Of a stretch of 64,000 nucleotides of DNA, positions 11,261 through 21,143 are shown in pieces. The number at the start of each line of letters is the position of its first letter. Positions within the stretch are counted from its first letter, which is position 1. Location of the stretch: IMG/VR virus record IMGVR_UViG_3300037297_000066, positions 310,001 to 374,000 of that record; one strand, written 5' to 3'. Position numbers and translations under genes: made by a program. Below the pieces are notes generated by a model, which searched no databases, was not told the DNA's origin, and saw only the letters and a list, made by a program, of their open reading frames with translations.

Positions 11261-11968
11261 GTGATTACGCTTGGCATCGACCCTTCGTTGACAGGGTTTG
11301 GCTGGTGCGTGCACAACGGATCGGTCATCGGTGCCAAGCGTGTCATCGGCAAGGGGGTGTTCGAGACCTCTTCCAAGAGACCTTTCATTTGGAGGTACAT
11401 CTTCTTGCGTCAGGCCGTGTTTAAGCTGCTCGATGCCTACCCGGAAGTGGAGGCTTTGGGGGTGGAGTCACCTCCTTTTGGGGAGCAGTTCTCCGAGGGG
11501 TTGTATGGCCTGTTTATCATGGTCATCGAGGCTGTTTTCCAGAGACGTAAGAACGTAGTTTTCTTCGATCCTCTGACAGTCAAGTTGTTGGCCAAGATGG
11601 ATCCGTCCATCCGCAAAGGGCAGATGGATAAGGCCGACATGGTGGAGGCATCCAAGGCAGACACGGGGATCAAGAAATGGAACCATAATGAAGCGGATGC
11701 TTTCATCATTTCCAGATCAGCCGCTAGGTTCTGGGACTTCTACGAAGAACGAGTGGTGGAAGAGGAGTTAACCCCTTCTGAGAAACATGTGTTCGCTAGA
11801 AAGCACACCTACAAGAGAGGTCGTCGAGCTGGGCGGACGGTCAAGAAGGGTACTGTCTATCGTGAGGGGGAACGGTTCTTTCGTTTCTCCGAGCTAACAC
11901 CTGAATACGTGGATGTGAGAGTGTTGTTTGAGCGTGGAGATCGTTATGTCCGAGACCGCCAAAACTGA
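11261..11968 (+). CDS. ruvC: RuvC-like Holliday junction resolvase
   Basis: TLGIDPSLTGFGW, conserved E (GVES), K...D, HNEADA. Confidence 0.85.
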   Translation: MITLGIDPSLTGFGWCVHNGSVIGAKRVIGKGVFETSSKRPFIWRYIFLRQAVFKLLDAYPEVEALGVESPPFGEQFSEGLYGLFIMVIEAVFQRRKNVVFFDPLTVKLLAKMDPSIRKGQMDKADMVEASKADTGIKKWNHNEADAFIISRSAARFWDFYEERVVEEELTPSEKHVFARKHTYKRGRRAGRTVKKGTVYREGERFFRFSELTPEYVDVRVLFERGDRYVRDRQN

Positions 11969-13361
11969 AGCCCCGAAACAGCAGGTTAAGAGGGGTCCCG
12001 GTCGGCCTCCTAAGAATCCTGGCGCCAAGCCTGGTCCGAAACCAGGTAAGAAGTCAGTAAAGAACGCCAACGCCAATCGTTCTGCCAAGTCAGCTGCAGC
12101 AGCTAGAAATGCCATTCACAAGTATCTGAAGCAAGATCCTGTGGCTATGAATGTTTCGCAGCTTCCCCACCTCTCTACGGGGAGCTCTAGCATCGACAAC
12201 CTGATTGGAGGCACTCCGTCCAAGGACGGCAGCGGCCCTGTCTGTCCTGGCTTCCCTAGAAAGCATGTCTCGGAAGTGTTTGGTCCTGAGTCAAGTGGAA
12301 AGACCACGTTGGCTTTGGAAACCGTTGTCCGTGTTCAGAAGAATGGCGGGGTAGCCATGTTTCTGGACTTTGAGCACGCTCTTCACCATGGCTATGCAAG
12401 CGCCGTTGGGGTGGATTTTCATAAGGACAGGTTGCTTCTCTATGCCCCTGAGACTCTTGAACAGGGTTTCAAAATGATTTGGACTGCCATCCATACGGGA
12501 GTGGATCTTGTGGTGGTGGATTCCGTATCTAGCATGGTGCCCAAGTCTGAGATGGAGAAGAAGCCCGATGAGGCGGCAAAGGTAGGGGCCCAGGCAGCTT
12601 CCTTTTCGATCATGCTTCCCAAGCTGATCAACTGGCTCCACAGTGAGGCTGCTCTGAAAATCAACCCTCAAGGAACGGCCATTATTTTCTTGAACCAGGA
12701 ACGGGCTTTCATTCAGACGTCGGGGGGTAAGGGAGGTCCGAAGGCCCGGGAGGGAACCGTCAACACCTCAGGAGGGAAGGCGCTCAAGTTCTATGCCTAC
12801 GTGCGGCTGATGATGACGAAAAAGGGGCATGACACCATCAAGCGGAAGGATCGTTTCACTGGCAAAGAACGGACATACCCCTACGGTAACCACGTCACAG
12901 TCAAGGTGGTGAAGTCGAAGATCGATGCTAAGCAGGGCCATTCCTGTGACATCTTCATTCGCTACGGTCAAGGCATCGACGATTACCACAGCATCCTTCA
13001 GGGGGCGTTGTCCAATCGTCTCGTCAAGACAGGAGGGGGAGGTTACTACGAATACGAAGGACAGCGGATTCGGGGTAAAGACAAGTTCCGTCAGTACCTT
13101 GTAGACAATCCGAAGATCTTCAAGAAGCTTCGGGCAGCTGTGCTGTCGGCCGTAGTAGAAACCGAGCCTCCGGTGGAGCTGGAGGAAGATGACGATCTGA
13201 TCAGTCAGATGGAGTCGGCGTTTGAAGGGGAGGACTTCGATTTGGCAGCTGCTGTGAACGAAGAGTACGAGGGAGAGGTCATCGAGGAAGATTCTTCGGA
13301 AGAGGAGGATTCCTCTGAAGAGGGGGAGGACTCCTCAGAGGAGGGGTCGGGGGAGGACTAG
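11946..13361 (+). CDS. recA: RecA recombinase with basic N-terminal and acidic C-terminal extensions
   Basis: EVFGPESSGKTTLAL, FLDFEHAL, VVVDSVSSMVP, IFLNQ, SGGKALKFYA, VKSKI; start probably ATG 11946. Confidence 0.95.
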   Translation: MSETAKTEAPKQQVKRGPGRPPKNPGAKPGPKPGKKSVKNANANRSAKSAAAARNAIHKYLKQDPVAMNVSQLPHLSTGSSSIDNLIGGTPSKDGSGPVCPGFPRKHVSEVFGPESSGKTTLALETVVRVQKNGGVAMFLDFEHALHHGYASAVGVDFHKDRLLLYAPETLEQGFKMIWTAIHTGVDLVVVDSVSSMVPKSEMEKKPDEAAKVGAQAASFSIMLPKLINWLHSEAALKINPQGTAIIFLNQERAFIQTSGGKGGPKAREGTVNTSGGKALKFYAYVRLMMTKKGHDTIKRKDRFTGKERTYPYGNHVTVKVVKSKIDAKQGHSCDIFIRYGQGIDDYHSILQGALSNRLVKTGGGGYYEYEGQRIRGKDKFRQYLVDNPKIFKKLRAAVLSAVVETEPPVELEEDDDLISQMESAFEGEDFDLAAAVNEEYEGEVIEEDSSEEEDSSEEGEDSSEEGSGED

Positions 13362-13366
13362 TCTGA

Positions 13367-14722
13367 ATGATTGAAGTCACCATTCAGAACTTCCAGTCGA
13401 TTCGAAAGGTATCCCTTCGGATTGATCGGTTCACAGCCCTAGTGGGTCGTTCTAACATTGGCAAGTCAGCTATTGTTAGGGCGATCCGCTGTGCTCTGAC
13501 AGGAGCTGCTGGTACCGAGTTCGTTCGACACGATCCAGAGACGTGTGCTCGTCTGCTCAAGGGGAACAAGAAGTGTAAATGCTTCACCTCTGTGCGTCTC
13601 AAGATGAACGGCATTTCCTTGCTTTGGGAAAAGGGGGATGCCGTCAACAAGTACACGGTTGTCAAAGATGGGGTGGAACAGGTCTACACCAAGGTAGAGC
13701 GGGGGACCCCTGAGTTTCTGAGCCCTGAGTTTTCTTTGGTCAAAGTTGGGGACTCCAAGGATCTGGTTCAGGTTTCTGAGCAGTTTGATCCTATCTTCTT
13801 GTTGGACCAATCAGGGGCTACCGTAGCGGATGTCCTCAGTGATGTAGCAAAACTGGATAGCATCAACGAGGCCATGCGGTTGGCCGAGAAGGATCGTAGG
13901 GAGGCGGTCTCTACTCGGAAGGTTAGAGAGAAGGATCTGAAGGCCATACGTGACGAACTTTCGGCCTATGACGGTTTGGATTCTACGGTGGCTCGGGCTC
14001 GCAGGGTACAGGAGGAGTACGAGGGCGTTTTGGCAGCCTCTAAACGGCTTCAGGAGCTCGTTGCCTATCGGCAGTCTCTAAGGGACCAGGTGACAGCCGC
14101 AAAGCTTCTGAAGGCCGCTACGGAGCCAGACTTACCTGATCGTGACGTATTGAGCTCCCAGTACACGAAGGCGAGTCAGCTGGAGAAGTTGGCCCGTCGT
14201 TCGGTTCAGCTTCGAGGACTGGTCAAGTGCATGCGGGAAGCTCTAGCCCCGGATCTACCTGACCACAGTTCGCTGGAGGCGTCTCATAGCAAGGCAAAAG
14301 AGTTGGAAGTCTTTGCGGGACGTCTTGTCGTAGTTCGTAAACAGATCAAGGCTCTTTTGGTGGTGCAAGGCACCTCCCTTATGGACGAGGCACCTGTTCA
14401 GAAAGCTTTGAACCGGACTGTGTTGTTGGGAGAGTGGGCGTCTCGTGTTCGTGGGCTTGTTGGGCTGTTGAAAGGATCCGAAAAGCTTCAGCAGTCGTTG
14501 GCAGCTCCTGATGCTTGCTCGAAGCCTTTGGAGAAGGTTGTTCGTTTGGCGGCCTTTTCCCAAAGGTATGAGACTCTTGTGGGCCAGGTGGGGGATCTGG
14601 AAGAGAGTCTTGAGAGGGCTGTAGAGGATGAAAAAGGGTTGCGACAGGAGTTCAATGAGCTCGGGGCGTGTCCCACTTGTTCTCAGCGTCTTAGTCCTGA
14701 ACACATGCTGGGGCACTCCTGA
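13367..14722 (+). CDS. sbcC: SbcC/Rad50-like ATPase, N-terminal half (Walker A, coiled coil, zinc hook)
   Basis: IQNFQSI, LVGRSNIGKSAI, coiled coil, CPTC at 14669-14680, then stop; no signature or Walker B. Confidence 0.85.
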   Translation: MIEVTIQNFQSIRKVSLRIDRFTALVGRSNIGKSAIVRAIRCALTGAAGTEFVRHDPETCARLLKGNKKCKCFTSVRLKMNGISLLWEKGDAVNKYTVVKDGVEQVYTKVERGTPEFLSPEFSLVKVGDSKDLVQVSEQFDPIFLLDQSGATVADVLSDVAKLDSINEAMRLAEKDRREAVSTRKVREKDLKAIRDELSAYDGLDSTVARARRVQEEYEGVLAASKRLQELVAYRQSLRDQVTAAKLLKAATEPDLPDRDVLSSQYTKASQLEKLARRSVQLRGLVKCMREALAPDLPDHSSLEASHSKAKELEVFAGRLVVVRKQIKALLVVQGTSLMDEAPVQKALNRTVLLGEWASRVRGLVGLLKGSEKLQQSLAAPDACSKPLEKVVRLAAFSQRYETLVGQVGDLEESLERAVEDEKGLRQEFNELGACPTCSQRLSPEHMLGHS

Positions 14723-15699
14723 TGGCTATTCGATTTCTCTACCGGACAGACGTACACATGGCGGATCGATCCCCCGCTTCATGGAAGGGAGACTACCCTG
14801 CTGAGCTCTGGGAGTCCCTTCGGCAGATCGGGGAGCTGGCCAGGAAGTACCAGGTACAAGCGGTGTTGGATGGGGGAGACTACTTCCACGTCAAAGCTGC
14901 TACCCGTAACTCTCATGCCATCGTGGCCAAGACGGCTTCTTTGCATCTGTCGGAGTACTCTTGTCCGGTGTGGGCTATCGAGGGCAACCATGACATTGCC
15001 TATCGCTCTCTGGACACCTTGGATAGACAACCTCTGGGTGTACTTTTTGCCTCGGGGGTGTTTCATAAGTTGAGGAATGAGGTTTTCCGAGAAGGCTCCC
15101 TTAAGGTGAGGGTGGTGGGGGTTCCATTTGATCCTCTTCTGAAGCTGGAAGATCTTCTGGCCATCAAGAAGGAGCCCGGTGATACCCACCTGATCATGGT
15201 GGTGCATGCTCTAGCGTCGAAAGACCCTCCTCCCAACGTGAACGAGTTTTTCGGAGAGTCTGTTTTCCGGTACAGTGACCTGGTTCACGAAGGGGGCCCT
15301 GACGTAGTCTGCTTTGGACATTGGCATCGGGACCAGGGAGTTGAGGTTATTGATGGTCGCTACTTCGTCAATCCTGGAGCTATCAGCCGGGGAGCTTTGA
15401 TCAAGGAGAACCTCAATCGAATTCCGAAGGTGGTTCTCATCGAGTGTTCGGAGGAGGGGATTTCTATCTCAGCTGCTCCTCTCAAGGTGGCCCCAGCTCG
15501 GGAGGTCTTTGACCTAGAGCGTAAAGCTCGTCAAGAACGGGAGAATGAGTCCATCGAGCAATTCGTGGACAGGATTCGACAAGACGTTCAGTTGGAGGCT
15601 TCCTCTTCGGTAGAGGAAACTGTTCGATCCCTTGACTTTGCTCGTGATGTGAGGGATGCGGCTTTGGAGTATCTTGAACGAGCTAGGGCCCAAAGCTGA
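14722..15699 (+). CDS. sbcD: SbcD/Mre11-like metallophosphoesterase nuclease
   Basis: TDVH, GGDYFH, EGNHD, VVH, FGHWH, NPGAISR motifs. Confidence 0.9.
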   Translation: MAIRFLYRTDVHMADRSPASWKGDYPAELWESLRQIGELARKYQVQAVLDGGDYFHVKAATRNSHAIVAKTASLHLSEYSCPVWAIEGNHDIAYRSLDTLDRQPLGVLFASGVFHKLRNEVFREGSLKVRVVGVPFDPLLKLEDLLAIKKEPGDTHLIMVVHALASKDPPPNVNEFFGESVFRYSDLVHEGGPDVVCFGHWHRDQGVEVIDGRYFVNPGAISRGALIKENLNRIPKVVLIECSEEGISISAAPLKVAPAREVFDLERKARQERENESIEQFVDRIRQDVQLEASSSVEETVRSLDFARDVRDAALEYLERARAQS

Positions 15700-16580
15700 T
15701 GTATCTGTCTTACTCTGGCTGGAAGAAACTGAGCGACTGCGAGTTTGCCTATTGGCTGGCTTACGTTGCTCGGTTACCCATCGAGGGTGTGGACAACATG
15801 GTCAACTCCTTGTTTGGGTCGGTGTTGGGGGAACTCTTCGAGGACTTTTACAATGGGGGGTACTGGCGCAAGAATCGACGGAACGGCCTCTCTTCCGAAG
15901 AGTTCTTGGATAGTCGGACAAAGGATAAGCTGCTGCAGGTAGTTAAGGATAAGAAGCGAAAGGGACAGGTCATCCAGTGGAAGGACGAGGACCCTTTAGC
16001 TACCTACAAGTCCAAGGATGAGTTGTTGAGGGACTTGCGTCAGGGTATTCGGTCTGGGTTGGCCAGCATACGGTTTCACAGGCTAATTGGGAAAGACGCA
16101 AGGGCCGAGGTGAAGCTGGATGGTACCTTCCATAGCCATCGGATTGCTGGCCGAGCAGACTTGCTAATGACTCGGATCCCTCCTGATGAGGATCTAGTCT
16201 TGTTAGATGGCAAAGGGTCCAAACCTCACAATCGGAAGTACGTGGACCCTGACCAGTTGCGTTGGTACGGAATGCTCTACCGGCACAAGTTCAAGAGACT
16301 TCCTGACAAACTTGGTTTTCTGTTTTGGAGAGCCGGACCGGTAGAGAGCATCGATTGGCTGGCTTTTTGCGAAGACGACCTGTCAGAGCTTTTTGAACGT
16401 GTGCTAACCGTTGCGAATAGTGTAGAATCTCGCCTTGCTCGGTTAGAGAGCAGCCCTTCTCTGTCGTCTGTCAGGAAGATTTTCAGAGACCGTCCGAGCC
16501 AGTCGGCTTGTCGTTTCTGCCCTTACGCCGTCCGCAAGATTTGTCCCGAAGGGTTCTCTTTGACCCATCAATCTGACTAA
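15699..16580 (+). CDS. PD-(D/E)XK nuclease, Cas4/AddB-like with four-Cys motif
   Basis: SYS...C near the N-terminus, GRADLL, LLDGK, QLRWY, CRFCPY...C. Confidence 0.85.
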   Translation: MYLSYSGWKKLSDCEFAYWLAYVARLPIEGVDNMVNSLFGSVLGELFEDFYNGGYWRKNRRNGLSSEEFLDSRTKDKLLQVVKDKKRKGQVIQWKDEDPLATYKSKDELLRDLRQGIRSGLASIRFHRLIGKDARAEVKLDGTFHSHRIAGRADLLMTRIPPDEDLVLLDGKGSKPHNRKYVDPDQLRWYGMLYRHKFKRLPDKLGFLFWRAGPVESIDWLAFCEDDLSELFERVLTVANSVESRLARLESSPSLSSVRKIFRDRPSQSACRFCPYAVRKICPEGFSLTHQSD

Positions 16581-16589
16581 GGAACAGCA

Positions 16590-16862
16590 ATGTCTCTCGA
16601 TCGACTACAGAAGAGATTTGAGGATCTTTCTCAACGGTACCACAAGGCTTCTGGGAACAAAGCCAAGCTGGAAGCCCAGCTGGAGATGAAGAAGAAGGAG
16701 TTGACTGATCTTGTAGAAGAGATCAAGGCAGCTGGTTTCGACCCTAAGAAGCTGAAGGAGGCTGTGGACGATGCTGAGAAAGAGCTGGTAGCTCTCATGG
16801 ATGAGTACGAGTCCAAGCTCAAGAGTGTGGAAGAGGCCCTAGAAGCCTACAAAAACAGATGA
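16590..16862 (+). CDS. Small coiled-coil protein (possible missing SbcC arm segment)
   Basis: 90 aa of heptad-rich helices broken by GFDP; AAGGA upstream. Confidence 0.75.
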   Translation: MSLDRLQKRFEDLSQRYHKASGNKAKLEAQLEMKKKELTDLVEEIKAAGFDPKKLKEAVDDAEKELVALMDEYESKLKSVEEALEAYKNR

Positions 16863-18118
16863 GGATGGAGATGAAGTTCAACGCATTGGTGAAGGATTTG
16901 GTGGCATCCTTGGATGTCGTTTCTGTGGTGCCTCCCAAGTATCCGGGGGCTGACAAGAGAGATTCTGGCTACTTGTTCGTGCTCAAAGAGGACAGGTGTC
17001 TGGTCTACTCTTCTGATGGGTCTCGGGTAGTTCGGTCAGAGTTTCCTGTGACGGAGGTAGAAGGCACTGGATCCTTCGTGTATCCCGGGGATGTCAAGGC
17101 CAGCGCCCCTTTGCGATTCTTGGACCAAGATTCGGAGATCACGATGGAGGCTGGTCACGAGGAGACCGGAGACCGTTACTTCGTCAAATACCAGGTGGGC
17201 CAGGCCAAATCGGAGAAGTCCACTTACGACCCGAGGCGGTTCTCTACCTTCGACGATGCTCTACAGAGGGCCGGGGAAGGGTTCGAGGTTGTCACTTCTG
17301 TGTTGAGGACTTCCTTGCAAATGGCCAAGCCTTACGTAGCTAATAGTTCGGATCCGGACAGTGCTTTTGCTACGGTGTGCTTGTTCGACGATTCGAACGA
17401 AGCCTGGGCCGCCGGCAACGGGGTCGTTTACGCAGCCGACAACAAGGGCAGCACGGCTTTTTTCTTCCAGTGCAGTGAGTTGGAAGGAAAGGGGCTATCG
17501 GTTCATGGCCAACACCTGCCGTTCGTGGGGGCTTTTTTGTCTAGGTGTGGGGTCAAAACCCGGGTTCTTGTAGGGGAGTCGATGACTTACCTTGTCAACG
17601 ACGATAACCAGGTCTTTGGTTGGAGTCGTTGCCAGAGTAATCACGATCACTTTCGCTACCCTGCTCTGAAGAAAGACCAGTTCGTTCTGCGCATGTCTTT
17701 GGAGAGTCTCCTGAACGCTCTTCGACACATGCAAGCGGAGATGGGGTCTCAACAGAGCAGGATCAACATGCGGTATTCTCACGAAGAGAAGATCCTGCAG
17801 TTCCGTGGTAGGGGCGGTTCGAACAAGGTGCAGAGTGTCCCGGTGGCAGTCACTCCTGTGAAAGACGAGGATGAGGCTGGAGGGGGTTCTGCTGGAGACT
17901 CAGAGGACTTTAGCCTCAACGCAAACGTCAACCATCTCATTTCGTTGGTGGAGACTTCCAAAGCTCACGAGGTGAACTTGAGAGTGAGTGCCGCTGGCAA
18001 GAAAGCGTTCTTCCGGACCATCGATGAGTTCCGTTTGGACGACAAAGGGAGAGTTGTGGCTGAGGTAGATGGGACCTACTTGTGCAGCGTGACACGATTT
18101 GCAACGACCCAAGCCTAG
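16859..18118 (+). CDS. dnaN: DNA polymerase sliding clamp (beta, DnaN-like), divergent
   Basis: 419 aa with three-domain periodicity; SSDG/AADN segments equivalent to beta-clamp ATD motifs, FRYP, FSLNANVNHL; context with holA/holB/dnaX. Confidence 0.65.
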   Translation: MRMEMKFNALVKDLVASLDVVSVVPPKYPGADKRDSGYLFVLKEDRCLVYSSDGSRVVRSEFPVTEVEGTGSFVYPGDVKASAPLRFLDQDSEITMEAGHEETGDRYFVKYQVGQAKSEKSTYDPRRFSTFDDALQRAGEGFEVVTSVLRTSLQMAKPYVANSSDPDSAFATVCLFDDSNEAWAAGNGVVYAADNKGSTAFFFQCSELEGKGLSVHGQHLPFVGAFLSRCGVKTRVLVGESMTYLVNDDNQVFGWSRCQSNHDHFRYPALKKDQFVLRMSLESLLNALRHMQAEMGSQQSRINMRYSHEEKILQFRGRGGSNKVQSVPVAVTPVKDEDEAGGGSAGDSEDFSLNANVNHLISLVETSKAHEVNLRVSAAGKKAFFRTIDEFRLDDKGRVVAEVDGTYLCSVTRFATTQA

Positions 18119-18807
18119 TCTCTAGGGTCCAGGCTCTTGGAGAGTCTTCGGCCAGATTGGTTGCTTTGCGTGATCGTCTGGTCGAAGACTTGAAGGCCAA
18201 AGAGACAGAGGTGGAGACCTTGGGGAGCACGATTGACAAGCTCACCAAGGTAGGGGAGTTGTTTCGCAAGTTGATGGATCTGTTGGTTCATGAGCAGGTC
18301 CAGGCAGTCAAGAGTCTCATTTCTAAAGGCTTTCAAGCCATTTTCTACGACCTTGATCTGTCCTTCGAGGCGGACATCCTGTCCAAGCACAACCGGGTTT
18401 GGATCGACTTCTTCATTCGGCACGGGCAACCAGACGACCCTCTCTCACATCGAGGGAAGCCCTTGGACTCGTTTGGAGGAGGCCCCTCTAGTGTGGCCTC
18501 TTTGGTGTTGCGTATCATCACATTGCTGAAGCTCAAGCGCTATCCGTTGCTGGTGTTGGACGAGGCTTTAGGGGCGGTATCTGACGAGTACACGGAACGT
18601 ACGGGTATGTTCCTGAACAAGCTGGCTGACGAAACGGGGATCGATATTCTGTTGGTGACGCACAAGGCGGCCTATCTAGATCATGCTAACCAAGCGTACC
18701 GCAGCTCCGAGGGGATAGAGGGGAGTGTACGGTACTTGATGCTCAAGGGCCTTCGACATGAAGACAGCACGAGAGATCGAAAACCGAATTCGTCAGTTGT
18801 TGGTTGA
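18082..18807 (+). CDS. sbcC: SbcC/Rad50-like ATPase, C-terminal half (signature, Walker B)
   Basis: Short coil, then DSFGGG signature, LLVLDEALGAVS Walker B/D-loop, LLVTH H-loop; start codon uncertain. Confidence 0.85.
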   Translation: MQRDTICNDPSLVSRVQALGESSARLVALRDRLVEDLKAKETEVETLGSTIDKLTKVGELFRKLMDLLVHEQVQAVKSLISKGFQAIFYDLDLSFEADILSKHNRVWIDFFIRHGQPDDPLSHRGKPLDSFGGGPSSVASLVLRIITLLKLKRYPLLVLDEALGAVSDEYTERTGMFLNKLADETGIDILLVTHKAAYLDHANQAYRSSEGIEGSVRYLMLKGLRHEDSTRDRKPNSSVVG

Positions 18808-19303
18808 CGAGGTCGATCGTCGAGTGGCGGTGGCTCAGGCTCGCATTCCTGTGAACTGCAAATTCAACCACCGTCAGCCGCTTGACCCTAGAAAGTTGGT
18901 AGGCGGGGAACCCAACCCTCAATACAATCGAATCAGCGACACGGAGCAGACTATTGGTCTGTGTATGGTGGGGGCGGAGGATCCTGAAGATTGGAAGGGT
19001 ACCATCTGCGAGGATGCTCTTGATGCTCAACGTTGCCCTCTCTTCCAATCTGTCTTGAGCAAGGAGGCCGTTTGGAAGCAACTGAAACTGGACTTGGTGA
19101 TGGAAGGCTGGGCTAAGGAGCGTATGCCCGAGCTCTACGCCTTGCTATGGGTGTTAGACCACGCTCTCTCTCCATTCATTCCGTGGTGGAAGAGAGTATG
19201 GTTTTGGTTTCTTCGGGTAGAGCCCGAGCCCCGTCTGACCTTCATTCCGGACTCACTGCTGCAACTTCCAAGCTCAGGATCTGATGAGACTGCCGGTTCT
19301 TGA
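18758..19303 (+). CDS. Hypothetical protein with four spaced Cys and a hydrophobic/Trp-rich C-terminal patch
   Basis: 181 aa; NCKFNH, GLC, TICE, RCPLF; PWWKRVWFWFL. Confidence 0.7.
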   Translation: MKTAREIENRIRQLLVDEVDRRVAVAQARIPVNCKFNHRQPLDPRKLVGGEPNPQYNRISDTEQTIGLCMVGAEDPEDWKGTICEDALDAQRCPLFQSVLSKEAVWKQLKLDLVMEGWAKERMPELYALLWVLDHALSPFIPWWKRVWFWFLRVEPEPRLTFIPDSLLQLPSSGSDETAGS

Positions 19304-19901
19304 ACGAATCCTGTGTGTGGAGAGACTACGTCGTCAGGCTTCTTTGTCTGGGGGTTTCTCTGTGCCTGTGATGTTGCAGTGGCCTGTTGGGCCGGAAGAG
19401 AGCCCCTTTCTGGTCAGCAACATGAAAGGTAGGTTTTTGTTAGGCCGTAGATCTAGGGAAGGGGATACCCGGCTGGCTTTCTTCAGCTGTGTTACGGAGG
19501 AAGAGGAAGCTGCTTTCCGGCGTTTTCTAGAAGATCTGCACCGAATTTCTGTGGATGGAGGATGGGGGAATCGGTGTACTAGTGTTCGAGGAGCTCAAGC
19601 CTTCATGGTTGGCCAGGGTCTTGAGCCTAAGATGCTGGTGGTGCCTTACTCTATGCTTCGTGCAGTTGGTGTTGACGTCAGTCTGGAAGAGGCAGAGAAT
19701 CTCATGCTGGCTCAGGGATGCGTTGCAGAAGTAGAAGGATTGAGAGTGATCACAAGCACGGTTTTGTCTTCGGGGTCTGCTGTCTTGTCCACTGCTCCTG
19801 CGTTGGTGGGGACCTGTGTCCGAGTGGACGACAGGTTGGGGGTCTTGATCAGGCAGGCTAACCGGTCAATTGTACTGGTGGGGGATGTCCTGGGTGAGTG
19901 A
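19284..19901 (+). CDS. Hypothetical protein
   Basis: 205-aa ORF overlapping both neighbours. Confidence 0.65.
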   Translation: MRLPVLERILCVERLRRQASLSGGFSVPVMLQWPVGPEESPFLVSNMKGRFLLGRRSREGDTRLAFFSCVTEEEEAAFRRFLEDLHRISVDGGWGNRCTSVRGAQAFMVGQGLEPKMLVVPYSMLRAVGVDVSLEEAENLMLAQGCVAEVEGLRVITSTVLSSGSAVLSTAPALVGTCVRVDDRLGVLIRQANRSIVLVGDVLGE

Positions 19902-20592
19902 TTTGGTGTCTCTAGCTCATGAGTCGGTAGACGAAGAGCGTCTTACCCTGTGGGGTAGAGGAGTCTCTGACTCTCAGATCGAGCAGTTCCAGGTAGGGTA
20001 TCTGGAGGAGATTCCGGATAGCCTGGAGGTCGATCAGGGGTTTTTGGAATGGGCCCGGAAGAAGGGCCTCTACAAGGCTCTGATGTTCCCCTTGACGAAT
20101 ACCTTGGGGGAGGTTAAGGGATTCCAGTTCCGGGTGGTTAGGCAAGGCAAGTCGGTCTACTCGGACTACTTCCTGACCGAAGAGGAGCCCGTTTACTTCG
20201 GGCTAGCTCAAGCGATCCCCTCGATTTGGGAGACTCGCAAGATCTTCATTGTCGAAGGGTGCTTCGATTTGTTCCCGATTCAGAGGGTGTTGCCGTACAC
20301 CATCGCCACCCTGAAGGCTGGGGTGTCCGAGAGCTTGGTCCCCTTGTTGAGAAGACTGGTGGACCAGGTGTGGATGGGGTACGACAATGACCCCGTGGGC
20401 CGAAAGCACGCTTACGGTTTTGCCAAGGAACACGGCCGTGAATTTGACGTGCAAGTGGTGCGCTACCCTGAGGTACCGTTAGCCGATGGCAAGAGAGCCA
20501 AGGACCCTGGTAACCTTTGGGAAGCCTGGGGGGATGAAGGTCTGAGAGACTTTCTCAATCGAAAGATGCAACCATACTCACAGGAGATATGA
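19885..20592 (+). CDS. dnaG: DNA primase catalytic core (TOPRIM), lacking the zinc-binding domain
   Basis: RGVSDSQIEQFQVGY, LMFPL, GFQFR, IVEGCFDL, MGYDNDPVG, KDPGNL; ATG 19885. Confidence 0.85.
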   Translation: MSWVSDLVSLAHESVDEERLTLWGRGVSDSQIEQFQVGYLEEIPDSLEVDQGFLEWARKKGLYKALMFPLTNTLGEVKGFQFRVVRQGKSVYSDYFLTEEEPVYFGLAQAIPSIWETRKIFIVEGCFDLFPIQRVLPYTIATLKAGVSESLVPLLRRLVDQVWMGYDNDPVGRKHAYGFAKEHGREFDVQVVRYPEVPLADGKRAKDPGNLWEAWGDEGLRDFLNRKMQPYSQEI

Positions 20593-21143
20593 AGATGGCG
20601 AGGACCTACGATTCCGGGGATGCTATTGAGTCGGTGGCCAATGGCTTGATTCCTCAGTACCACCCTGAACTAACCTCTGCTCGAATGGCGTATGTCTTCG
20701 TCGATCGAGCGGGCAAGAAAGCCGGCAAAGAGGTGATGGGAGTCACCAAAAAAATCGGTGGCGTTCACGAGTACCTTCTAGAGAAGGACTTCTTGATCGT
20801 CATTGCTCTGGACAAGTGGAACGAGCTCAACGAAGGCCAGCGGTTGGCTTTGGTTGACCACTTGCTAGAACGGTGCACCGGTGAGGAGGACGAAAGCACG
20901 GGTGAGATGCGCTGGAAGGTGCGTGAACCTGATGTTCAGGAGTTCGCTTCGATTCTGCAGCGTCGGGGCGTGTGGCATTCGGACCTTTCTGGGTTCGTTT
21001 CCGTGGCTCAGTTGATTTCCGTGGACGAGATCGTCGAGGAAGAAGTGGAAGTCCAGGGCGAAGAAGGGGAGAGGGAGAACGTTGTCGTTTCTGAGTCGGC
21101 GGACGACGACGAAGACGAAGATTTCGATTTCGATGACGACTAG
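20589..21143 (+). CDS. Putative phage metallopeptidase-fold protein with a degenerate HExxH
   Basis: DFLIVI..DKW, LVDHLLERC, WKVREPDVQEF..ILQRRG resemble that family; acidic tail. Confidence 0.6.
   Translation: MKMARTYDSGDAIESVANGLIPQYHPELTSARMAYVFVDRAGKKAGKEVMGVTKKIGGVHEYLLEKDFLIVIALDKWNELNEGQRLALVDHLLERCTGEEDESTGEMRWKVREPDVQEFASILQRRGVWHSDLSGFVSVAQLISVDEIVEEEVEVQGEEGERENVVVSESADDDEDEDFDFDDD

What the first reader, a model, noticed from the sequence alone, without database searches (positions are those of the whole stretch)
13367..18807. SbcC/Rad50 split at the zinc hook, with halves separated by four genes
Seen: the 451-aa gene has Walker A, a coiled coil with ~41-aa Pro-kinked repeats (PDLPD x2) and ends just after CPTC. 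The signature (SFGGG), Walker B (LVLDE) and H-loop (VTH) are in a separate 241-aa gene 3.4 kb downstream. Between them lie sbcD, a Cas4-like nuclease, a 90-aa pure coiled coil and the clamp gene. Established: Rad50/SbcC normally folds back so that both ATPase halves are on one chain. Inference: a two- or three-chain SMC-like ATPase assembled in trans, with the 90-aa protein supplying part of the returning arm. It may form a larger end-processing complex with the interleaved nuclease and clamp. Split versions may exist elsewhere; I could not check.
Basis: partly seen in the sequence, partly recalled or inferred. Interest (0 to 1): 0.62.

Follow-up and report, generated by a model that had tools for sequence, protein, structure and literature searches.

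The report
Phage SbcC/Rad50 split into three genes
In this 437-kb phage the DNA-end-processing ATPase SbcC/Rad50 is encoded in separate pieces cut right after its zinc hook; the arrangement is ancient, conserved and under selection in many phages, so it offers a natural test of how the Rad50 arm and hook work.

Summary
Gene 13367-14722 encodes Walker A, the Q-loop, a segmented helical arm and a terminal G-x-CPTC hook. Gene 18082-18807 encodes the signature motif, Walker B, D-loop and H-loop. SbcD, a Cas4-like nuclease, a 90-aa two-helix protein (cc90) and a DnaN-fold clamp lie between them.

This is neither decay nor misassembly. The same 11-gene block is collinear in about 13 independent huge-phage contigs. 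An independent marine-sediment assembly spans the locus without indels. dN/dS is 0.05-0.10 for every gene. The complete genome holds no other SbcC.

The split is old. It occurs in Bacillus phages 0305phi8-36, phBC6A51 and vB_BboS-125, in Tunturiibacter phage Tunturi_5, in the uncultured phage LR745208, and in hundreds of metagenomic protein clusters. PHROGs files the halves as two unlinked families.

cc90 accompanies every hook-bearing N-half (six lineages) and is absent from the one hook-less lineage. The clamp is a lineage-specific interloper. A complex prediction gives only weak support for cc90 docking (0.33 against a best control of 0.01), and that docking depends on the N-half.

My reading is a three-piece SbcC assembled in trans. 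How the arm is paired is unresolved: its roughly 41-aa repeats vary in number with no matching change elsewhere. I rate it a new variant of a known kind.

The parts
13367..14722 (+). SbcC/Rad50 N-piece (451 aa): ATPase N-lobe, segmented helical arm and C-terminal zinc hook
   Evidence: Pfam AAA_23 4.7e-8 and phrog_16465 1.8e-19. Best fold matches of the low-confidence model are Rad50 heads. At least 487 homologous clusters exist.
13445..13468 (+). Walker A motif GRSNIGKS
   Evidence: Invariant G27/S29/N30/G32/K33 in alignment A1; regex check.
13529..13582 (+). Clade-specific His/Cys cluster H55, C60, C70, C72 in the N-lobe (putative extra metal site)
   Evidence: H55, C60, C70 and C72 are invariant in the 14-sequence alignment A1. 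The three Cys are 100% conserved in 121 sequences. The insertion is absent from LR745208, 0305phi8-36 and Magritte.
13769..13804 (+). Q-loop region QVSEQFDPIFLL
   Evidence: Q135, Q139, F140, P142, F144 and L146 are invariant.
14126..14371 (+). Two tandem 41-aa PDLPD-initiated arm repeats; the second is an extra unit present in only a minority of relatives
   Evidence: Self-similarity score 61 at offset 41. In 121 aligned sequences the region W281-321 has occupancy 0.15.
14507..14662 (+). Hook-proximal arm helix (residues 381-432), constant in length across the family
   Evidence: Ungapped block W382-434 in all 121 sequences. a/d heptad hydrophobicity is 0.80.
14663..14704 (+). Zinc-hook motif G-A-CPTC-x7-H at the end of the chain
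   Evidence: G433, C435 and C438 are invariant. CxxC lies in the last 30 aa of 118 of 120 homologs. The family profile aligns to P. furiosus Rad50 hook structures 1l8d (E 0.012) and 6zff (E 0.019).
14722..15699 (+). SbcD/Mre11-type nuclease (325 aa)
   Evidence: Pfam Metallophos 1.6e-11 and phrog_100. All phosphoesterase motifs are present. It overlaps the N-piece stop by 1 nt.
15699..16580 (+). Cas4/AddB-like PD-(D/E)XK nuclease (293 aa)
   Evidence: Pfam PDDEXK_1 6.9e-16. Cys at 14, 271, 274, 282. The homolog in L033 also hits Cas_Cas4.
16590..16862 (+). cc90: 90-aa two-helix protein with an invariant A-G-[FY]-D-P corner; candidate third piece of the split SbcC
   Evidence: Invariant A48/G49/P52. 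a/d heptad score 0.85-0.90. 325 representatives, almost all stand-alone. Co-occurs with hook-bearing N-pieces in six lineages. Complex score 0.33 against a best control of 0.01, rated weak.
16859..18118 (+). DnaN-type three-domain sliding clamp (419 aa), interleaved in huge-phage lineages only
   Evidence: AlphaFold2 pLDDT 89. Foldseek 3p16_A E 5.8e-18. The LR745208 homolog hits phrog_947, processivity factor. It is absent from this position in Bacillus phages.
18082..18807 (+). SbcC/Rad50 C-piece (241 aa): short entry helix plus ATPase C-lobe
   Evidence: phrog_15167 1.1e-13. The profile hits SMC head C-lobes in the PDB. At least 533 homologous clusters of 215-243 aa exist. The conserved start overlaps the clamp gene by 37 nt.
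18469..18486 (+). ABC signature motif SFGGGP
   Evidence: G132, G133, G134 and P135 are invariant.
18547..18585 (+). Walker B LLVLDE followed by a D-loop-like ALGAVSD
   Evidence: L157, L159, D160, E161, L163 and S167 are invariant.
18652..18666 (+). H-loop LVTHK
   Evidence: V192 and T193 are at least 90% conserved. H194 is present in 12 of 14 sequences.
11261..13361 (+). Upstream RuvC-like resolvase and RecA/UvsX recombinase, part of the same collinear block
   Evidence: phrog_159 3.5e-14; Pfam RecA 1e-43; synteny.
18758..20592 (+). Downstream conserved 181-aa Cys-containing protein, 205-aa protein and Toprim primase, also in the collinear block
   Evidence: Synteny in all loci. Primase hits phrog_6444 and phrog_47. 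Conserved Cys and a PWWK motif in the 181-aa family.

Best explanation
This is a naturally split SbcC/Rad50 whose pieces are translated separately from one tightly packed operon and assembled non-covalently.

Shown:
- The N-piece carries Walker A, the Q-loop, a segmented helical arm and a terminal Rad50-type CPxC hook.
- The C-piece carries a short entry helix and the signature, Walker B, D-loop and H-loop lobe.
- Neither piece has the other's motifs, and the phage has no other SbcC.
- The arrangement is conserved across very distant phages and is under purifying selection.

Inferred from established knowledge: P. furiosus Rad50 N- and C-segments expressed as separate chains form an active catalytic domain (Hopfner et al. 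2000, PDB 1F2U). By analogy, the two lobes dock to make one ABC ATPase head, with the N-piece base helix (about residues 150-199) pairing with the C-piece entry helix (about residues 12-50). Two heads then engage on ATP, and SbcD binds as in SbcCD/Mre11-Rad50. The complex would process DNA ends and hairpins for the neighbouring RecA, RuvC and Cas4-like nuclease in recombination-dependent replication.

Inferred, moderate confidence: the 90-aa two-helix protein cc90 is a third piece that binds the hook-proximal part of the N-piece arm. There it would replace the return strand that the cut removed, so that the hook is presented from a helical bundle.

Unresolved: what pairs with the rest of the arm, whose repeats of about 41 aa vary in number.
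For: 1. Complementary motifs, all invariant in relatives.

2. One N-type segment, one C-type segment and no full-length SbcC in the complete 437-kb genome.

3. The block RuvC-RecA-N-SbcD-Cas4-cc90-clamp-C-181-205-primase is collinear in about 13 distinct contigs at 35-60% identity. The same order holds in distant L033 and L031.

4. Deep relatives are also split:
- LR745208.
- 0305phi8-36, with gp8 as an SbcD::N fusion, gp7 = cc90 and gp5 = C.
- phBC6A51 and vB_BboS-125.
- Tunturi_5.
- Magritte.

5. At least 487 N-type and at least 533 C-type stand-alone clusters.

6. Purifying selection: dN/dS 0.045-0.097. 34 of 39 strain-level substitutions are synonymous, with no indels, in an independent 43.8-kb contig.

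7. The hook profile aligns to solved Rad50 hooks, and the chain ends where the return helix would begin.

8. Gene junctions of -1, -1, +9, -4 and -37 nt, with no excess of promoter or terminator signals.

9. For cc90:
- Present in six of six hook-bearing lineages and absent genome-wide from hook-less Magritte.
- Always downstream of the N-piece.
- It stays beside the N-piece in Tunturi_5, where the C-piece is 107 kb away.
- It is the best conserved module gene between the window and L033, at 45% identity.
- Complex score 0.33 (runs 0.28, 0.33, 0.35) against a best control of 0.01. The score falls to 0.01 when the N-piece is replaced. Runs agree in at least 71% of contacts and the partner pLDDT is at least 70. 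In the tool's calibration the mark was reached by 58 of 80 solved complexes and 2 of 110 mismatched pairs. Scores of 0.60 or under came from only 7 of those 80 solved complexes and from both mismatches, so the verdict is weak support.
- On the full-length SbcC profile phrog_77, N-pieces end near position 641-649. C-pieces extrapolate to start near 737-740. That leaves about 90 positions uncovered.
Against: - No direct test of N-piece to C-piece binding was run, because the single complex job scored cc90.
- The cc90 complex score is in the range the tool itself calls more often wrong than right unless the pairing was likely beforehand.
- No fusion of cc90 to either piece or to an unsplit SbcC appears among the 150 best representatives.
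- N-piece arms vary in steps of 40-46 aa at four different sites, while cc90 and the C-piece keep constant length. A simple one-to-one antiparallel arm is therefore not possible.
- cc90's invariant sharp corner suggests a hairpin rather than a straight return strand.
- The N-piece alone folds with low confidence (pLDDT 64.5), so the arm geometry is not known.
- There is no expression or biochemical evidence. No RNA run holds the locus.
Confidence: 0.82

Rival explanations
1. A two-piece enzyme only. The N- and C-pieces form the SbcC, and cc90 is an unrelated neighbour, for example a clamp- or replication-associated factor or a regulator. The N-piece arm is then stabilised by pairing with itself: either a parallel homodimer closed by the zinc hook, or an internal zig-zag bundle.
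For: - cc90 overlaps the clamp gene start by 4 nt in the window.
- No cc90 fusions to SbcC pieces were found.
- cc90 length is constant while the arm varies. Homotypic pairing would tolerate that variation automatically.
- The complex score is only weak.
- One cc90 relative (P0280) carries a winged-helix-like C-terminal extension. That reading comes from looking at its sequence only.
Against: - cc90 persists next to the split SbcC in Bacillus phages that have no clamp gene there.
- It persists beside the N-piece in Tunturi_5.
- It is missing from the only hook-less lineage.
- The predicted docking vanishes when the N-piece is replaced.
- Both odd and even numbers of arm helices occur. That does not fit a fixed internal zig-zag with a fixed hook position.
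Confidence: 0.3
2. A broken gene or an assembly artefact: an SbcC pseudogene interrupted by inserted genes, or a chimeric contig.
For: Homing-endonuclease-type genes lie next to or inside the module in some relatives: an AP2-domain gene between the N-piece and cc90 in vB_BboS-125, an HNH gene beside 0305phi8-36 gp8, and a probable intein in the L008 SbcD. Insertion is therefore a plausible origin of the split.
Against: - The same architecture occurs in about 13 independent contigs and several cultured phages.
- An independent assembly spans the locus with no indels or joints.
- dN/dS is 0.05-0.10 and strain differences are almost all synonymous.
- All catalytic motifs are invariant in hundreds of relatives.
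- The start and stop of each piece are conserved.
Confidence: 0.02
3. The pieces are rejoined after transcription or translation, by trans-splicing inteins, ribosomal bypass or RNA splicing, giving a normal single-chain SbcC.
For: A probable intein occurs in one relative's SbcD, so protein splicing exists in this gene neighbourhood.
Against: - Four complete, conserved and selected genes lie between the pieces.
- In Tunturi_5 and Magritte the pieces are 107 kb and at least 39 kb apart.
- The N-piece ends 5-15 residues after the hook and the C-piece starts with a conserved MSSDxxH. There is no room for split-intein halves.
- No intein or Hint family hit in either piece.
Confidence: 0.01
4. The two pieces act independently: the N-piece as a nucleotide-binding hook or tether protein, and the C-piece as a separate SMC-like regulator. 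This is how current annotations read ('exonuclease' and 'chromosome segregation ATPase').
For: - Databases treat them as unlinked families, phrog_16465 and phrog_15167.
- In some phages the genes are far apart.
Against: - An ABC ATPase site needs Walker A and the Q-loop from one lobe, and Walker B, the H-loop and the signature motif from the other. Each piece has only one set.
- Both sets stay invariant, which is not expected if no composite site is formed.
- Both pieces were found in every genome examined that has either one.
- Both map to opposite ends of the single SbcC profile phrog_77.
Confidence: 0.04

Closest known systems
Bacterial SbcCD and phage T4 gp46/gp47 (Rad50/Mre11 family)
   Same: ABC ATPase with Walker A and Q-loop in one lobe and signature, Walker B, D-loop and H-loop in the other. 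A helical arm is inserted between the lobes. A CPxC zinc hook follows a long helix. An adjacent Mre11/SbcD phosphoesterase has all its motifs. The genomic context is phage recombination (RecA/UvsX, RuvC).
   Different: The polypeptide is cut just after the hook, so the antiparallel arm cannot be intramolecular. The return strand is largely missing from the C-piece, which keeps only about 40 residues of it. A separate 90-aa two-helix protein co-occurs with the hook. The arm is built of about 41-aa proline-delimited helices whose number varies between relatives.
Engineered two-chain Rad50 catalytic domain (P. furiosus Rad50cd, PDB 1F2U/1II8; Hopfner et al. 2000, cited from my own knowledge)
   Same: N- and C-terminal ATPase segments made as separate chains associate into a functional head. 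The N-piece model's fold matches include these very chains.
   Different: That is a laboratory construct with the arm deleted. Here the split is natural, the N-piece keeps the whole outgoing arm and hook, and the pieces are encoded kilobases apart.
Mre11-Rad50 fusion proteins (Mimivirus R555 type; Yoshida et al. 2011, PMC3175470)
   Same: 0305phi8-36 gp8, a relative of this N-piece, is one of the fusions listed there (SbcD domain plus Rad50 N-part). That paper noted that one P-loop NTPase segment was 'not observed' in it.
   Different: The window's SbcD and N-piece are separate genes. The 'missing' segment of gp8 is identified here as the separate gene gp5, three genes downstream. The paper does not report this.
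Phage 'genes in pieces' created by inserted mobile endonuclease genes (for example the split ribonucleotide reductase of phage Aeh1; cited from my own knowledge)
   Same: An essential enzyme is encoded as separately translated fragments that reassemble. Homing-endonuclease-type genes lie at or near the cut in some relatives.
   Different: Here the split is ancient, fixed across many phage lineages, and accompanied by a dedicated small protein. The genes now between the pieces are ordinary replication and repair genes.

Membership tests
SbcC/Rad50 ABC ATPase | Walker A (P-loop) and Q-loop in an N-terminal lobe | tested here: met
   GRSNIGKS at residues 27-34 and Q135/Q139 are invariant. Pfam AAA_23 scores 34.3 bits, above the 27-bit cut-off.
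SbcC/Rad50 ABC ATPase | Signature motif, Walker B, D-loop and H-loop in a C-terminal lobe | tested here: met
   FGGGP, LLVLDE, S167-D168 and VTH are conserved in the 241-aa gene. The profile aligns to SMC head C-lobes. Pfam SMC_N and SbcC_Walker_B score only below their cut-offs.
SbcC/Rad50 ABC ATPase | Both lobes on one polypeptide, joined by an intramolecular antiparallel coiled coil | tested here: not met
   The lobes are in separate genes 3.36 kb apart, and this holds in all relatives examined. So this is a variant architecture of the family, not a canonical member.
SbcC/Rad50 ABC ATPase | CxxC zinc hook after a long helix | tested here: met
   G-x-CPxC is invariant and present in 118 of 120 homolog tails. 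The profile aligns with the 1l8d and 6zff hooks at E 0.012 and 0.019, ranks 2-3 of 177,635 sequences. Zinc binding itself was not tested.
SbcC/Rad50 ABC ATPase | Partner Mre11/SbcD phosphoesterase | tested here: met
   The adjacent gene hits Metallophos at 1.6e-11 and has all five motif blocks. It is fused to the N-piece in 0305phi8-36.
SbcC/Rad50 ABC ATPase | ATP-dependent head dimerisation and nuclease activation | not testable with these tools
   This needs biochemistry.
DnaN beta sliding clamp (the 419-aa gene) | Three tandem clamp domains forming the DnaN fold | tested here: met
   AlphaFold2 pLDDT 89 and pTM 0.86. Foldseek gives at least 500 DnaN chains, the best at E 5.8e-18, with TM up to 0.79. 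No Pfam hit by sequence.
Cas4/AddB-type PD-(D/E)XK nuclease (the 293-aa gene) | PD-(D/E)XK core plus one N-terminal and three C-terminal Cys for an iron-sulfur cluster | tested here: inconclusive
   PDDEXK_1 6.9e-16. Cys at 14, 271, 274 and 282 fit the pattern. A distant homolog hits Cas_Cas4 weakly. The cluster itself was not tested.

The most novel reading that the evidence does not exclude
Rad50/SbcC can work as three separate polypeptides: an N-lobe with outgoing arm and hook, a stand-alone 90-aa two-helix 'return-strand surrogate' that caps the hook-proximal helix, and a C-lobe. Its arm is a modular string of about 41-aa helices whose number changes freely. That would mean that neither covalent continuity through the hook nor a length-matched antiparallel coiled coil is needed for Rad50-type function.
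Probability: 0.45. Interest if true: 0.78.

Novelty: new variant of a known kind. Interest (0 to 1): 0.66.

Why it matters
How the long arm and zinc hook of Rad50/SbcC pass information to the ATPase head is a long-standing question. Studies so far rely on engineered truncations. This family is a natural, selected version in which the chain is cut at the hook, the return strand is reduced to a separate small protein, and arm length changes in discrete modules.

It occurs in cultured, tractable phages (phBC6A51 of Bacillus cereus, 0305phi8-36, vB_BboS-125), so the assembly, stoichiometry and activity can be tested directly.

There is also a practical gain for annotation. Hundreds of 'chromosome segregation ATPase', 'ATPase' and 'exonuclease' annotations in phage genomes, and two unlinked PHROG families, can be recognised as pieces of one enzyme. 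The 'missing' ATPase segment of the 0305phi8-36 Mre11-Rad50 fusion is located.

Tried and rejected
- DNA-level search of the locus against cultured phages found nothing. Only protein-level searches found relatives.
- A single-sequence search of the hook region against the PDB gave only generic coiled coils. A family profile was needed.
- The complex-prediction job (N-piece + C-piece + cc90, with cc90 scored) returned 'weak support': 0.33 against a best control of 0.01. No interface was reported, so it cannot say where cc90 sits. It did not score N-to-C binding.
- The Rosetta-stone search for cc90 fusions with the length-unrestricted profile search found no fusion to SbcC pieces.
- The cc90 profile against the PDB and the ESM Atlas gave only a local AGYDP helix-corner motif and generic long-helix or hairpin look-alikes.
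- 0305phi8-36 gp6, which occupies the clamp's position, shows no detectable similarity to the clamp (hhalign probability 1.7%) and no Pfam or PHROG hit.
- Magritte gp1 and gp3 are not cc90-like.
- The 181-aa gene downstream of the C-piece is unrelated to the CxxC-starting protein at the same position in Bacillus phages.
- The N-piece alone gave a low-confidence model (pLDDT 64.5, pTM 0.33), so I drew no conclusion on arm geometry from it.
- I considered that C435/C438/H446 together with His/Cys-7 of the C-piece might form an inter-chain zinc staple. The residues are conserved, but a His at the same spacing from the CxxC also stands in the P. furiosus Rad50 hook sequence that the profile aligned to. 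So its conservation here is no specific sign of a staple, and I do not advance the idea beyond a note.
- Literature searches for any description of a split Rad50/SbcC found none. The library lacks most subscription journals, including the original 0305phi8-36 genome paper.

Full report
**What the window is.** The window is part of a complete 437,331-bp phage genome with direct terminal repeats. The region around the finding is a replication and recombination block, with all genes on the + strand:
- RuvC-like resolvase (11261-11968)
- RecA/UvsX (11928-13361)
- the six genes of the finding
- two conserved genes of unknown function
- a Toprim primase

**Check of the observation.**
- The 451-aa gene (13367-14722) has Walker A GRSNIGKS (residues 27-34), a Q-loop region, and Pfam AAA_23 above threshold. 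It has two PDLPD-initiated repeats exactly 41 aa apart (self-similarity 61, against 31 or less at other offsets). CPTC lies at residues 435-438, 13 residues before the stop.
- The 241-aa gene (18082-18807, GTG start) has SFGGGP, LLVLDE, a D-loop-like S-D and LVTHK, but no Walker A. The N-piece has no Walker B.
- Between them lie an SbcD with all phosphoesterase motifs and a PD-(D/E)XK nuclease with a Cas4/AddB-like cysteine pattern. There is also a 90-aa protein with very strong heptads, and a 419-aa protein.
- The 419-aa protein has no Pfam hit, but it folds with pLDDT 89 into a DnaN beta-clamp (Foldseek E about 6e-18, TM up to 0.79).

**Not decay and not an artefact.**
- Protein-guided searches of viral contigs returned about 13 distinct huge-phage contigs (up to 416 kb). 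In all of them the 11 genes from RuvC to primase are collinear at 35-60% identity, with the SbcC split in the same way.
- Both pieces keep conserved starts and stops. The C-piece start overlaps the clamp gene by about 37 nt in the relatives too.
- An independent marine-sediment assembly holds a 43.8-kb contig that spans the 5.4-kb locus with 41 substitutions, no indels and no joints. Of the 39 listed substitutions, 34 are synonymous.
- In the least diverged genome pair, dN/dS is 0.097 (N-piece), 0.045 (SbcD), 0.086 (nuclease), 0.051 (cc90), 0.088 (clamp) and 0.066 (C-piece), against 0.077 for RecA.
- The whole genome contains exactly one AAA_23-type segment, one SbcC Walker-B-type segment and no full-length SbcC or SMC.
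- Gene junctions are -1, -1, +9, -4 and -37 nt. Promoter- and terminator-like sites are not above shuffled expectation, which fits one operon with translational coupling.

**How widespread the split is.**
- Word-indexed profile searches found at least 533 clusters of C-piece relatives, all 215-243 aa. They also found at least 487 clusters of N-piece relatives, on contigs up to 475 kb.
- Cultured or named phages also have it:
  - Bacillus phage 0305phi8-36: gp8 is an SbcD::N-piece fusion, gp7 is a cc90 homolog, gp6 is unknown and gp5 is the C-piece.
  - Bacillus prophage phBC6A51: BC1852 'Exonuclease SbcC', BC1854, BC1855 'Chromosome segregation ATPases', BC1857 'SbcD'.
  - Also vB_BboS-125, PHBA67-T, Microbacterium phage Magritte, Tunturiibacter phage Tunturi_5, a Microcystis phage, and the 485-kb uncultured phage LR745208.
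- PHROGs holds the two pieces as separate, unlinked families: phrog_16465 'exonuclease' and phrog_15167 'ATPase'. The 0305phi8-36 proteins match them at 6e-167 and 2e-98.
- Yoshida et al. 2011 (PMC3175470) listed 0305phi8-36 gp8 among Mre11-Rad50 fusions and remarked that one P-loop NTPase segment 'was not observed'. That segment is gp5.
- I found no paper describing a split Rad50/SbcC. The library does not hold most subscription journals.

**The cut is at a Rad50-type hook.**
- In 121 aligned N-pieces, G-x-C-P-x-C is invariant. 118 of 120 homologs have the CxxC within the last 30 residues, and a His follows about 11 residues later.
- A profile of the last ~80 residues ranks the two P. furiosus Rad50 hook structures (1l8d, 6zff) second and third among 177,635 PDB sequences, at E 0.012 and 0.019.
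- That alignment pairs 'LGvCPtCsqpleadH' with 'kGKCPVCGRELTDEH'. The statistics are modest, but the motif match is specific.
- In Rad50 the return helix begins at that His. Here the protein ends 5-15 residues later.
- None of 120 C-pieces has a CxxC in its first 110 residues.

**The 90-aa protein (cc90).**
- It has two heptad-rich helices (about residues 3-47 and 53-88) joined by an invariant A-G-[FY]-D-P corner.
- An exhaustive profile search found 325 representatives. Almost all are stand-alone proteins of 80-100 aa, and none of the best 150 is fused to an SbcC piece.

The argument for its membership is phylogenetic:
- It is present in all six hook-bearing lineages examined: the window's clade, the LR745208/L033 clade, 0305phi8-36, phBC6A51, vB_BboS-125 and Tunturi_5.
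- With a broader profile the scores are 75.7, 43.0, 35.9, 44.6 and 20.0 bits, against 9.3 for the best of 300 shuffles.
- It is absent from the whole genome of Magritte, whose N-piece has no hook.
- It is always encoded after the N-piece and, where the genes are clustered, before the C-piece. That is the order of the corresponding parts in a single-chain SbcC.
- In Tunturi_5, where the C-piece is 107 kb away, it stays directly behind the N-piece.
- In the Bacillus siphophages no clamp gene lies between the pieces, so the clamp is a lineage-specific interloper and cc90 is not.
- cc90 is the best conserved module gene between the window and the distant L033: 45% identity, against 27% (N-piece), 35% (C-piece) and 33% (SbcD).
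- On the full-length SbcC profile phrog_77, N-pieces end near position 641-649. C-pieces extrapolate back to about 737-740. That leaves about 90 positions uncovered, the size of cc90 or gp7. This arithmetic is rough, because arm regions carry indels.

The one complex prediction available (N-piece, C-piece and cc90, with cc90 scored):
- Scores were 0.28, 0.33 and 0.35 (median 0.33), against a best control of 0.01.
- The score falls to 0.01 when the N-piece is replaced. Runs agree in at least 71% of contacts, and the partner pLDDT is at least 70.
- In the tool's calibration the mark was reached by 58 of 80 solved complexes and 2 of 110 mismatches.
- Scores of 0.60 or under came from only 7 of those 80 solved complexes and from both mismatches, so the verdict is 'weak support'.
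- Together with the co-occurrence pattern, I put cc90 as a subunit at about 0.65, and as a literal return strand at about 0.3-0.45.

**The arm is unusual and not explained.**
- The AlphaFold2 model of the N-piece alone is poor (pLDDT 64.5). Its secondary structure, together with the conserved turn motifs, defines a base helix (150-199) that ends in an invariant Y-x-G-L-D.
- Five further helices of 32-52 aa follow, delimited by Pro-rich turns.
- Across the family, N-piece lengths are trimodal: 402-419, 444-455 and 486-492 aa, plus one of 354 aa.
- All arm indels are units of 40-46 aa, at four different sites. The base helix and the hook-proximal helix (382-434) never vary, and cc90 and the C-piece stay constant in length.
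- Both odd and even helix numbers occur.
- This rules out a simple length-matched antiparallel coil made of N-piece against cc90 plus C-piece. It also fits poorly with a fixed internal zig-zag.
- Possibilities I cannot separate are: parallel pairing of two N-piece arms closed by the shared zinc hook; several cc90 copies per arm; or side-branch helices.

**Most likely mechanism.**
- Shown: complementary, conserved, co-inherited and selected pieces, with an adjacent SbcD.
- Inferred from the established behaviour of ABC ATPases and of the engineered two-chain Rad50 catalytic domain: the lobes dock in trans, with the N base helix pairing with the C entry helix. ATP then brings two composite heads together, and SbcD supplies the nuclease.
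- Inferred with moderate confidence: cc90 binds the constant, hook-proximal part of the arm.
- The gene neighbourhood (RecA, RuvC, Cas4-like nuclease, clamp, primase) points to end and hairpin processing for recombination-dependent replication, as for T4 gp46/gp47.
- The origin of the split may lie in insertion of mobile endonuclease genes. An AP2-domain gene sits at the cut in vB_BboS-125 and an HNH gene lies beside gp8 in 0305phi8-36. This is speculation.

**Verdict.** This is a new, undescribed variant architecture of a well-known enzyme. It is widespread in phages and testable in cultured ones.

Noticed in passing
window 13529-13582 (N-piece residues 55-72): An H55/C60/C70/C72 cluster (FVRH...C...KKCKC) lies in an insertion in the ATPase N-lobe. 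All four residues are invariant in the 14-sequence alignment, and the three Cys are 100% conserved in 121 relatives. The insertion is absent from LR745208, 0305phi8-36 and Magritte. It could be a second metal site specific to this huge-phage clade.
   Followed up: partly
window 18082-18105 (C-piece residues 1-8) and 14669-14719 (N-piece tail): The C-piece starts with a conserved MSSDxxH, with His or Cys at position 7 in 100 of 120 relatives (Cys in the window). The N-piece tail has one or two conserved His after the CPxC. Whether these contribute to a shared metal site at the cut is unknown.
   Followed up: partly
L008:5523-7589 (same as L014:11350-13416): The SbcD homolog in this relative is 688 aa instead of about 325. 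An insertion of about 360 aa after residue 194 has a weak LAGLIDADG_3 hit, so it is probably an intein.
   Followed up: partly
L037:6468-6845 (phBC6A51 BC1856) and L038:6609-6965 (vB_BboS-125 gp36): The gene just after the C-piece in the Bacillus phages encodes a helical protein of about 120 aa that begins M-C-x-K-C-E, a CxxC at its very N-terminus. It could be a further zinc-linked piece of the system. It is unrelated to the 181-aa gene at the same position in the window.
   Followed up: partly
window 18758-19303: A 181-aa protein conserved in every relative directly after the C-piece, overlapping it by 50 nt. It has four conserved Cys (residues 34, 69, 84, 93) and a conserved C-terminal hydrophobic PWWK region. 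It has no Pfam or PHROG hit.
   Followed up: partly
L038:5137-5709 (vB_BboS-125 gp33) and L002:7429-7977 (0305phi8-36 gp9): An AP2-domain gene sits exactly between the N-piece and cc90 in vB_BboS-125. An HNH endonuclease gene abuts the SbcD::N-piece fusion in 0305phi8-36. Mobile endonuclease genes at the cut hint at how the split arose.
   Followed up: no
L001:4968-7806 (LR745208): In this 485-kb phage, five extra genes are inserted between the N-piece and SbcD, one with a weak DUF6782 metallopeptidase-like hit. The pieces are therefore 6.3 kb apart, while the rest of the order is kept.
   Followed up: no
window 20589-21143 and 11928-13361: A PhageMetallopep-family protein (3.5e-22) with an acidic tail follows the primase. 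The RecA homolog has a basic N-terminal extension of about 60 aa and a long acidic Ser/Glu-rich C-terminal tail.
   Followed up: no
P0280 (258 aa) and P0370 (434 aa): Two rare cc90 relatives are longer than the rest. In one the cc90 module is followed by a winged-helix-like region (read from its sequence only). In the other it is embedded in a 434-aa protein of unknown function.
   Followed up: no
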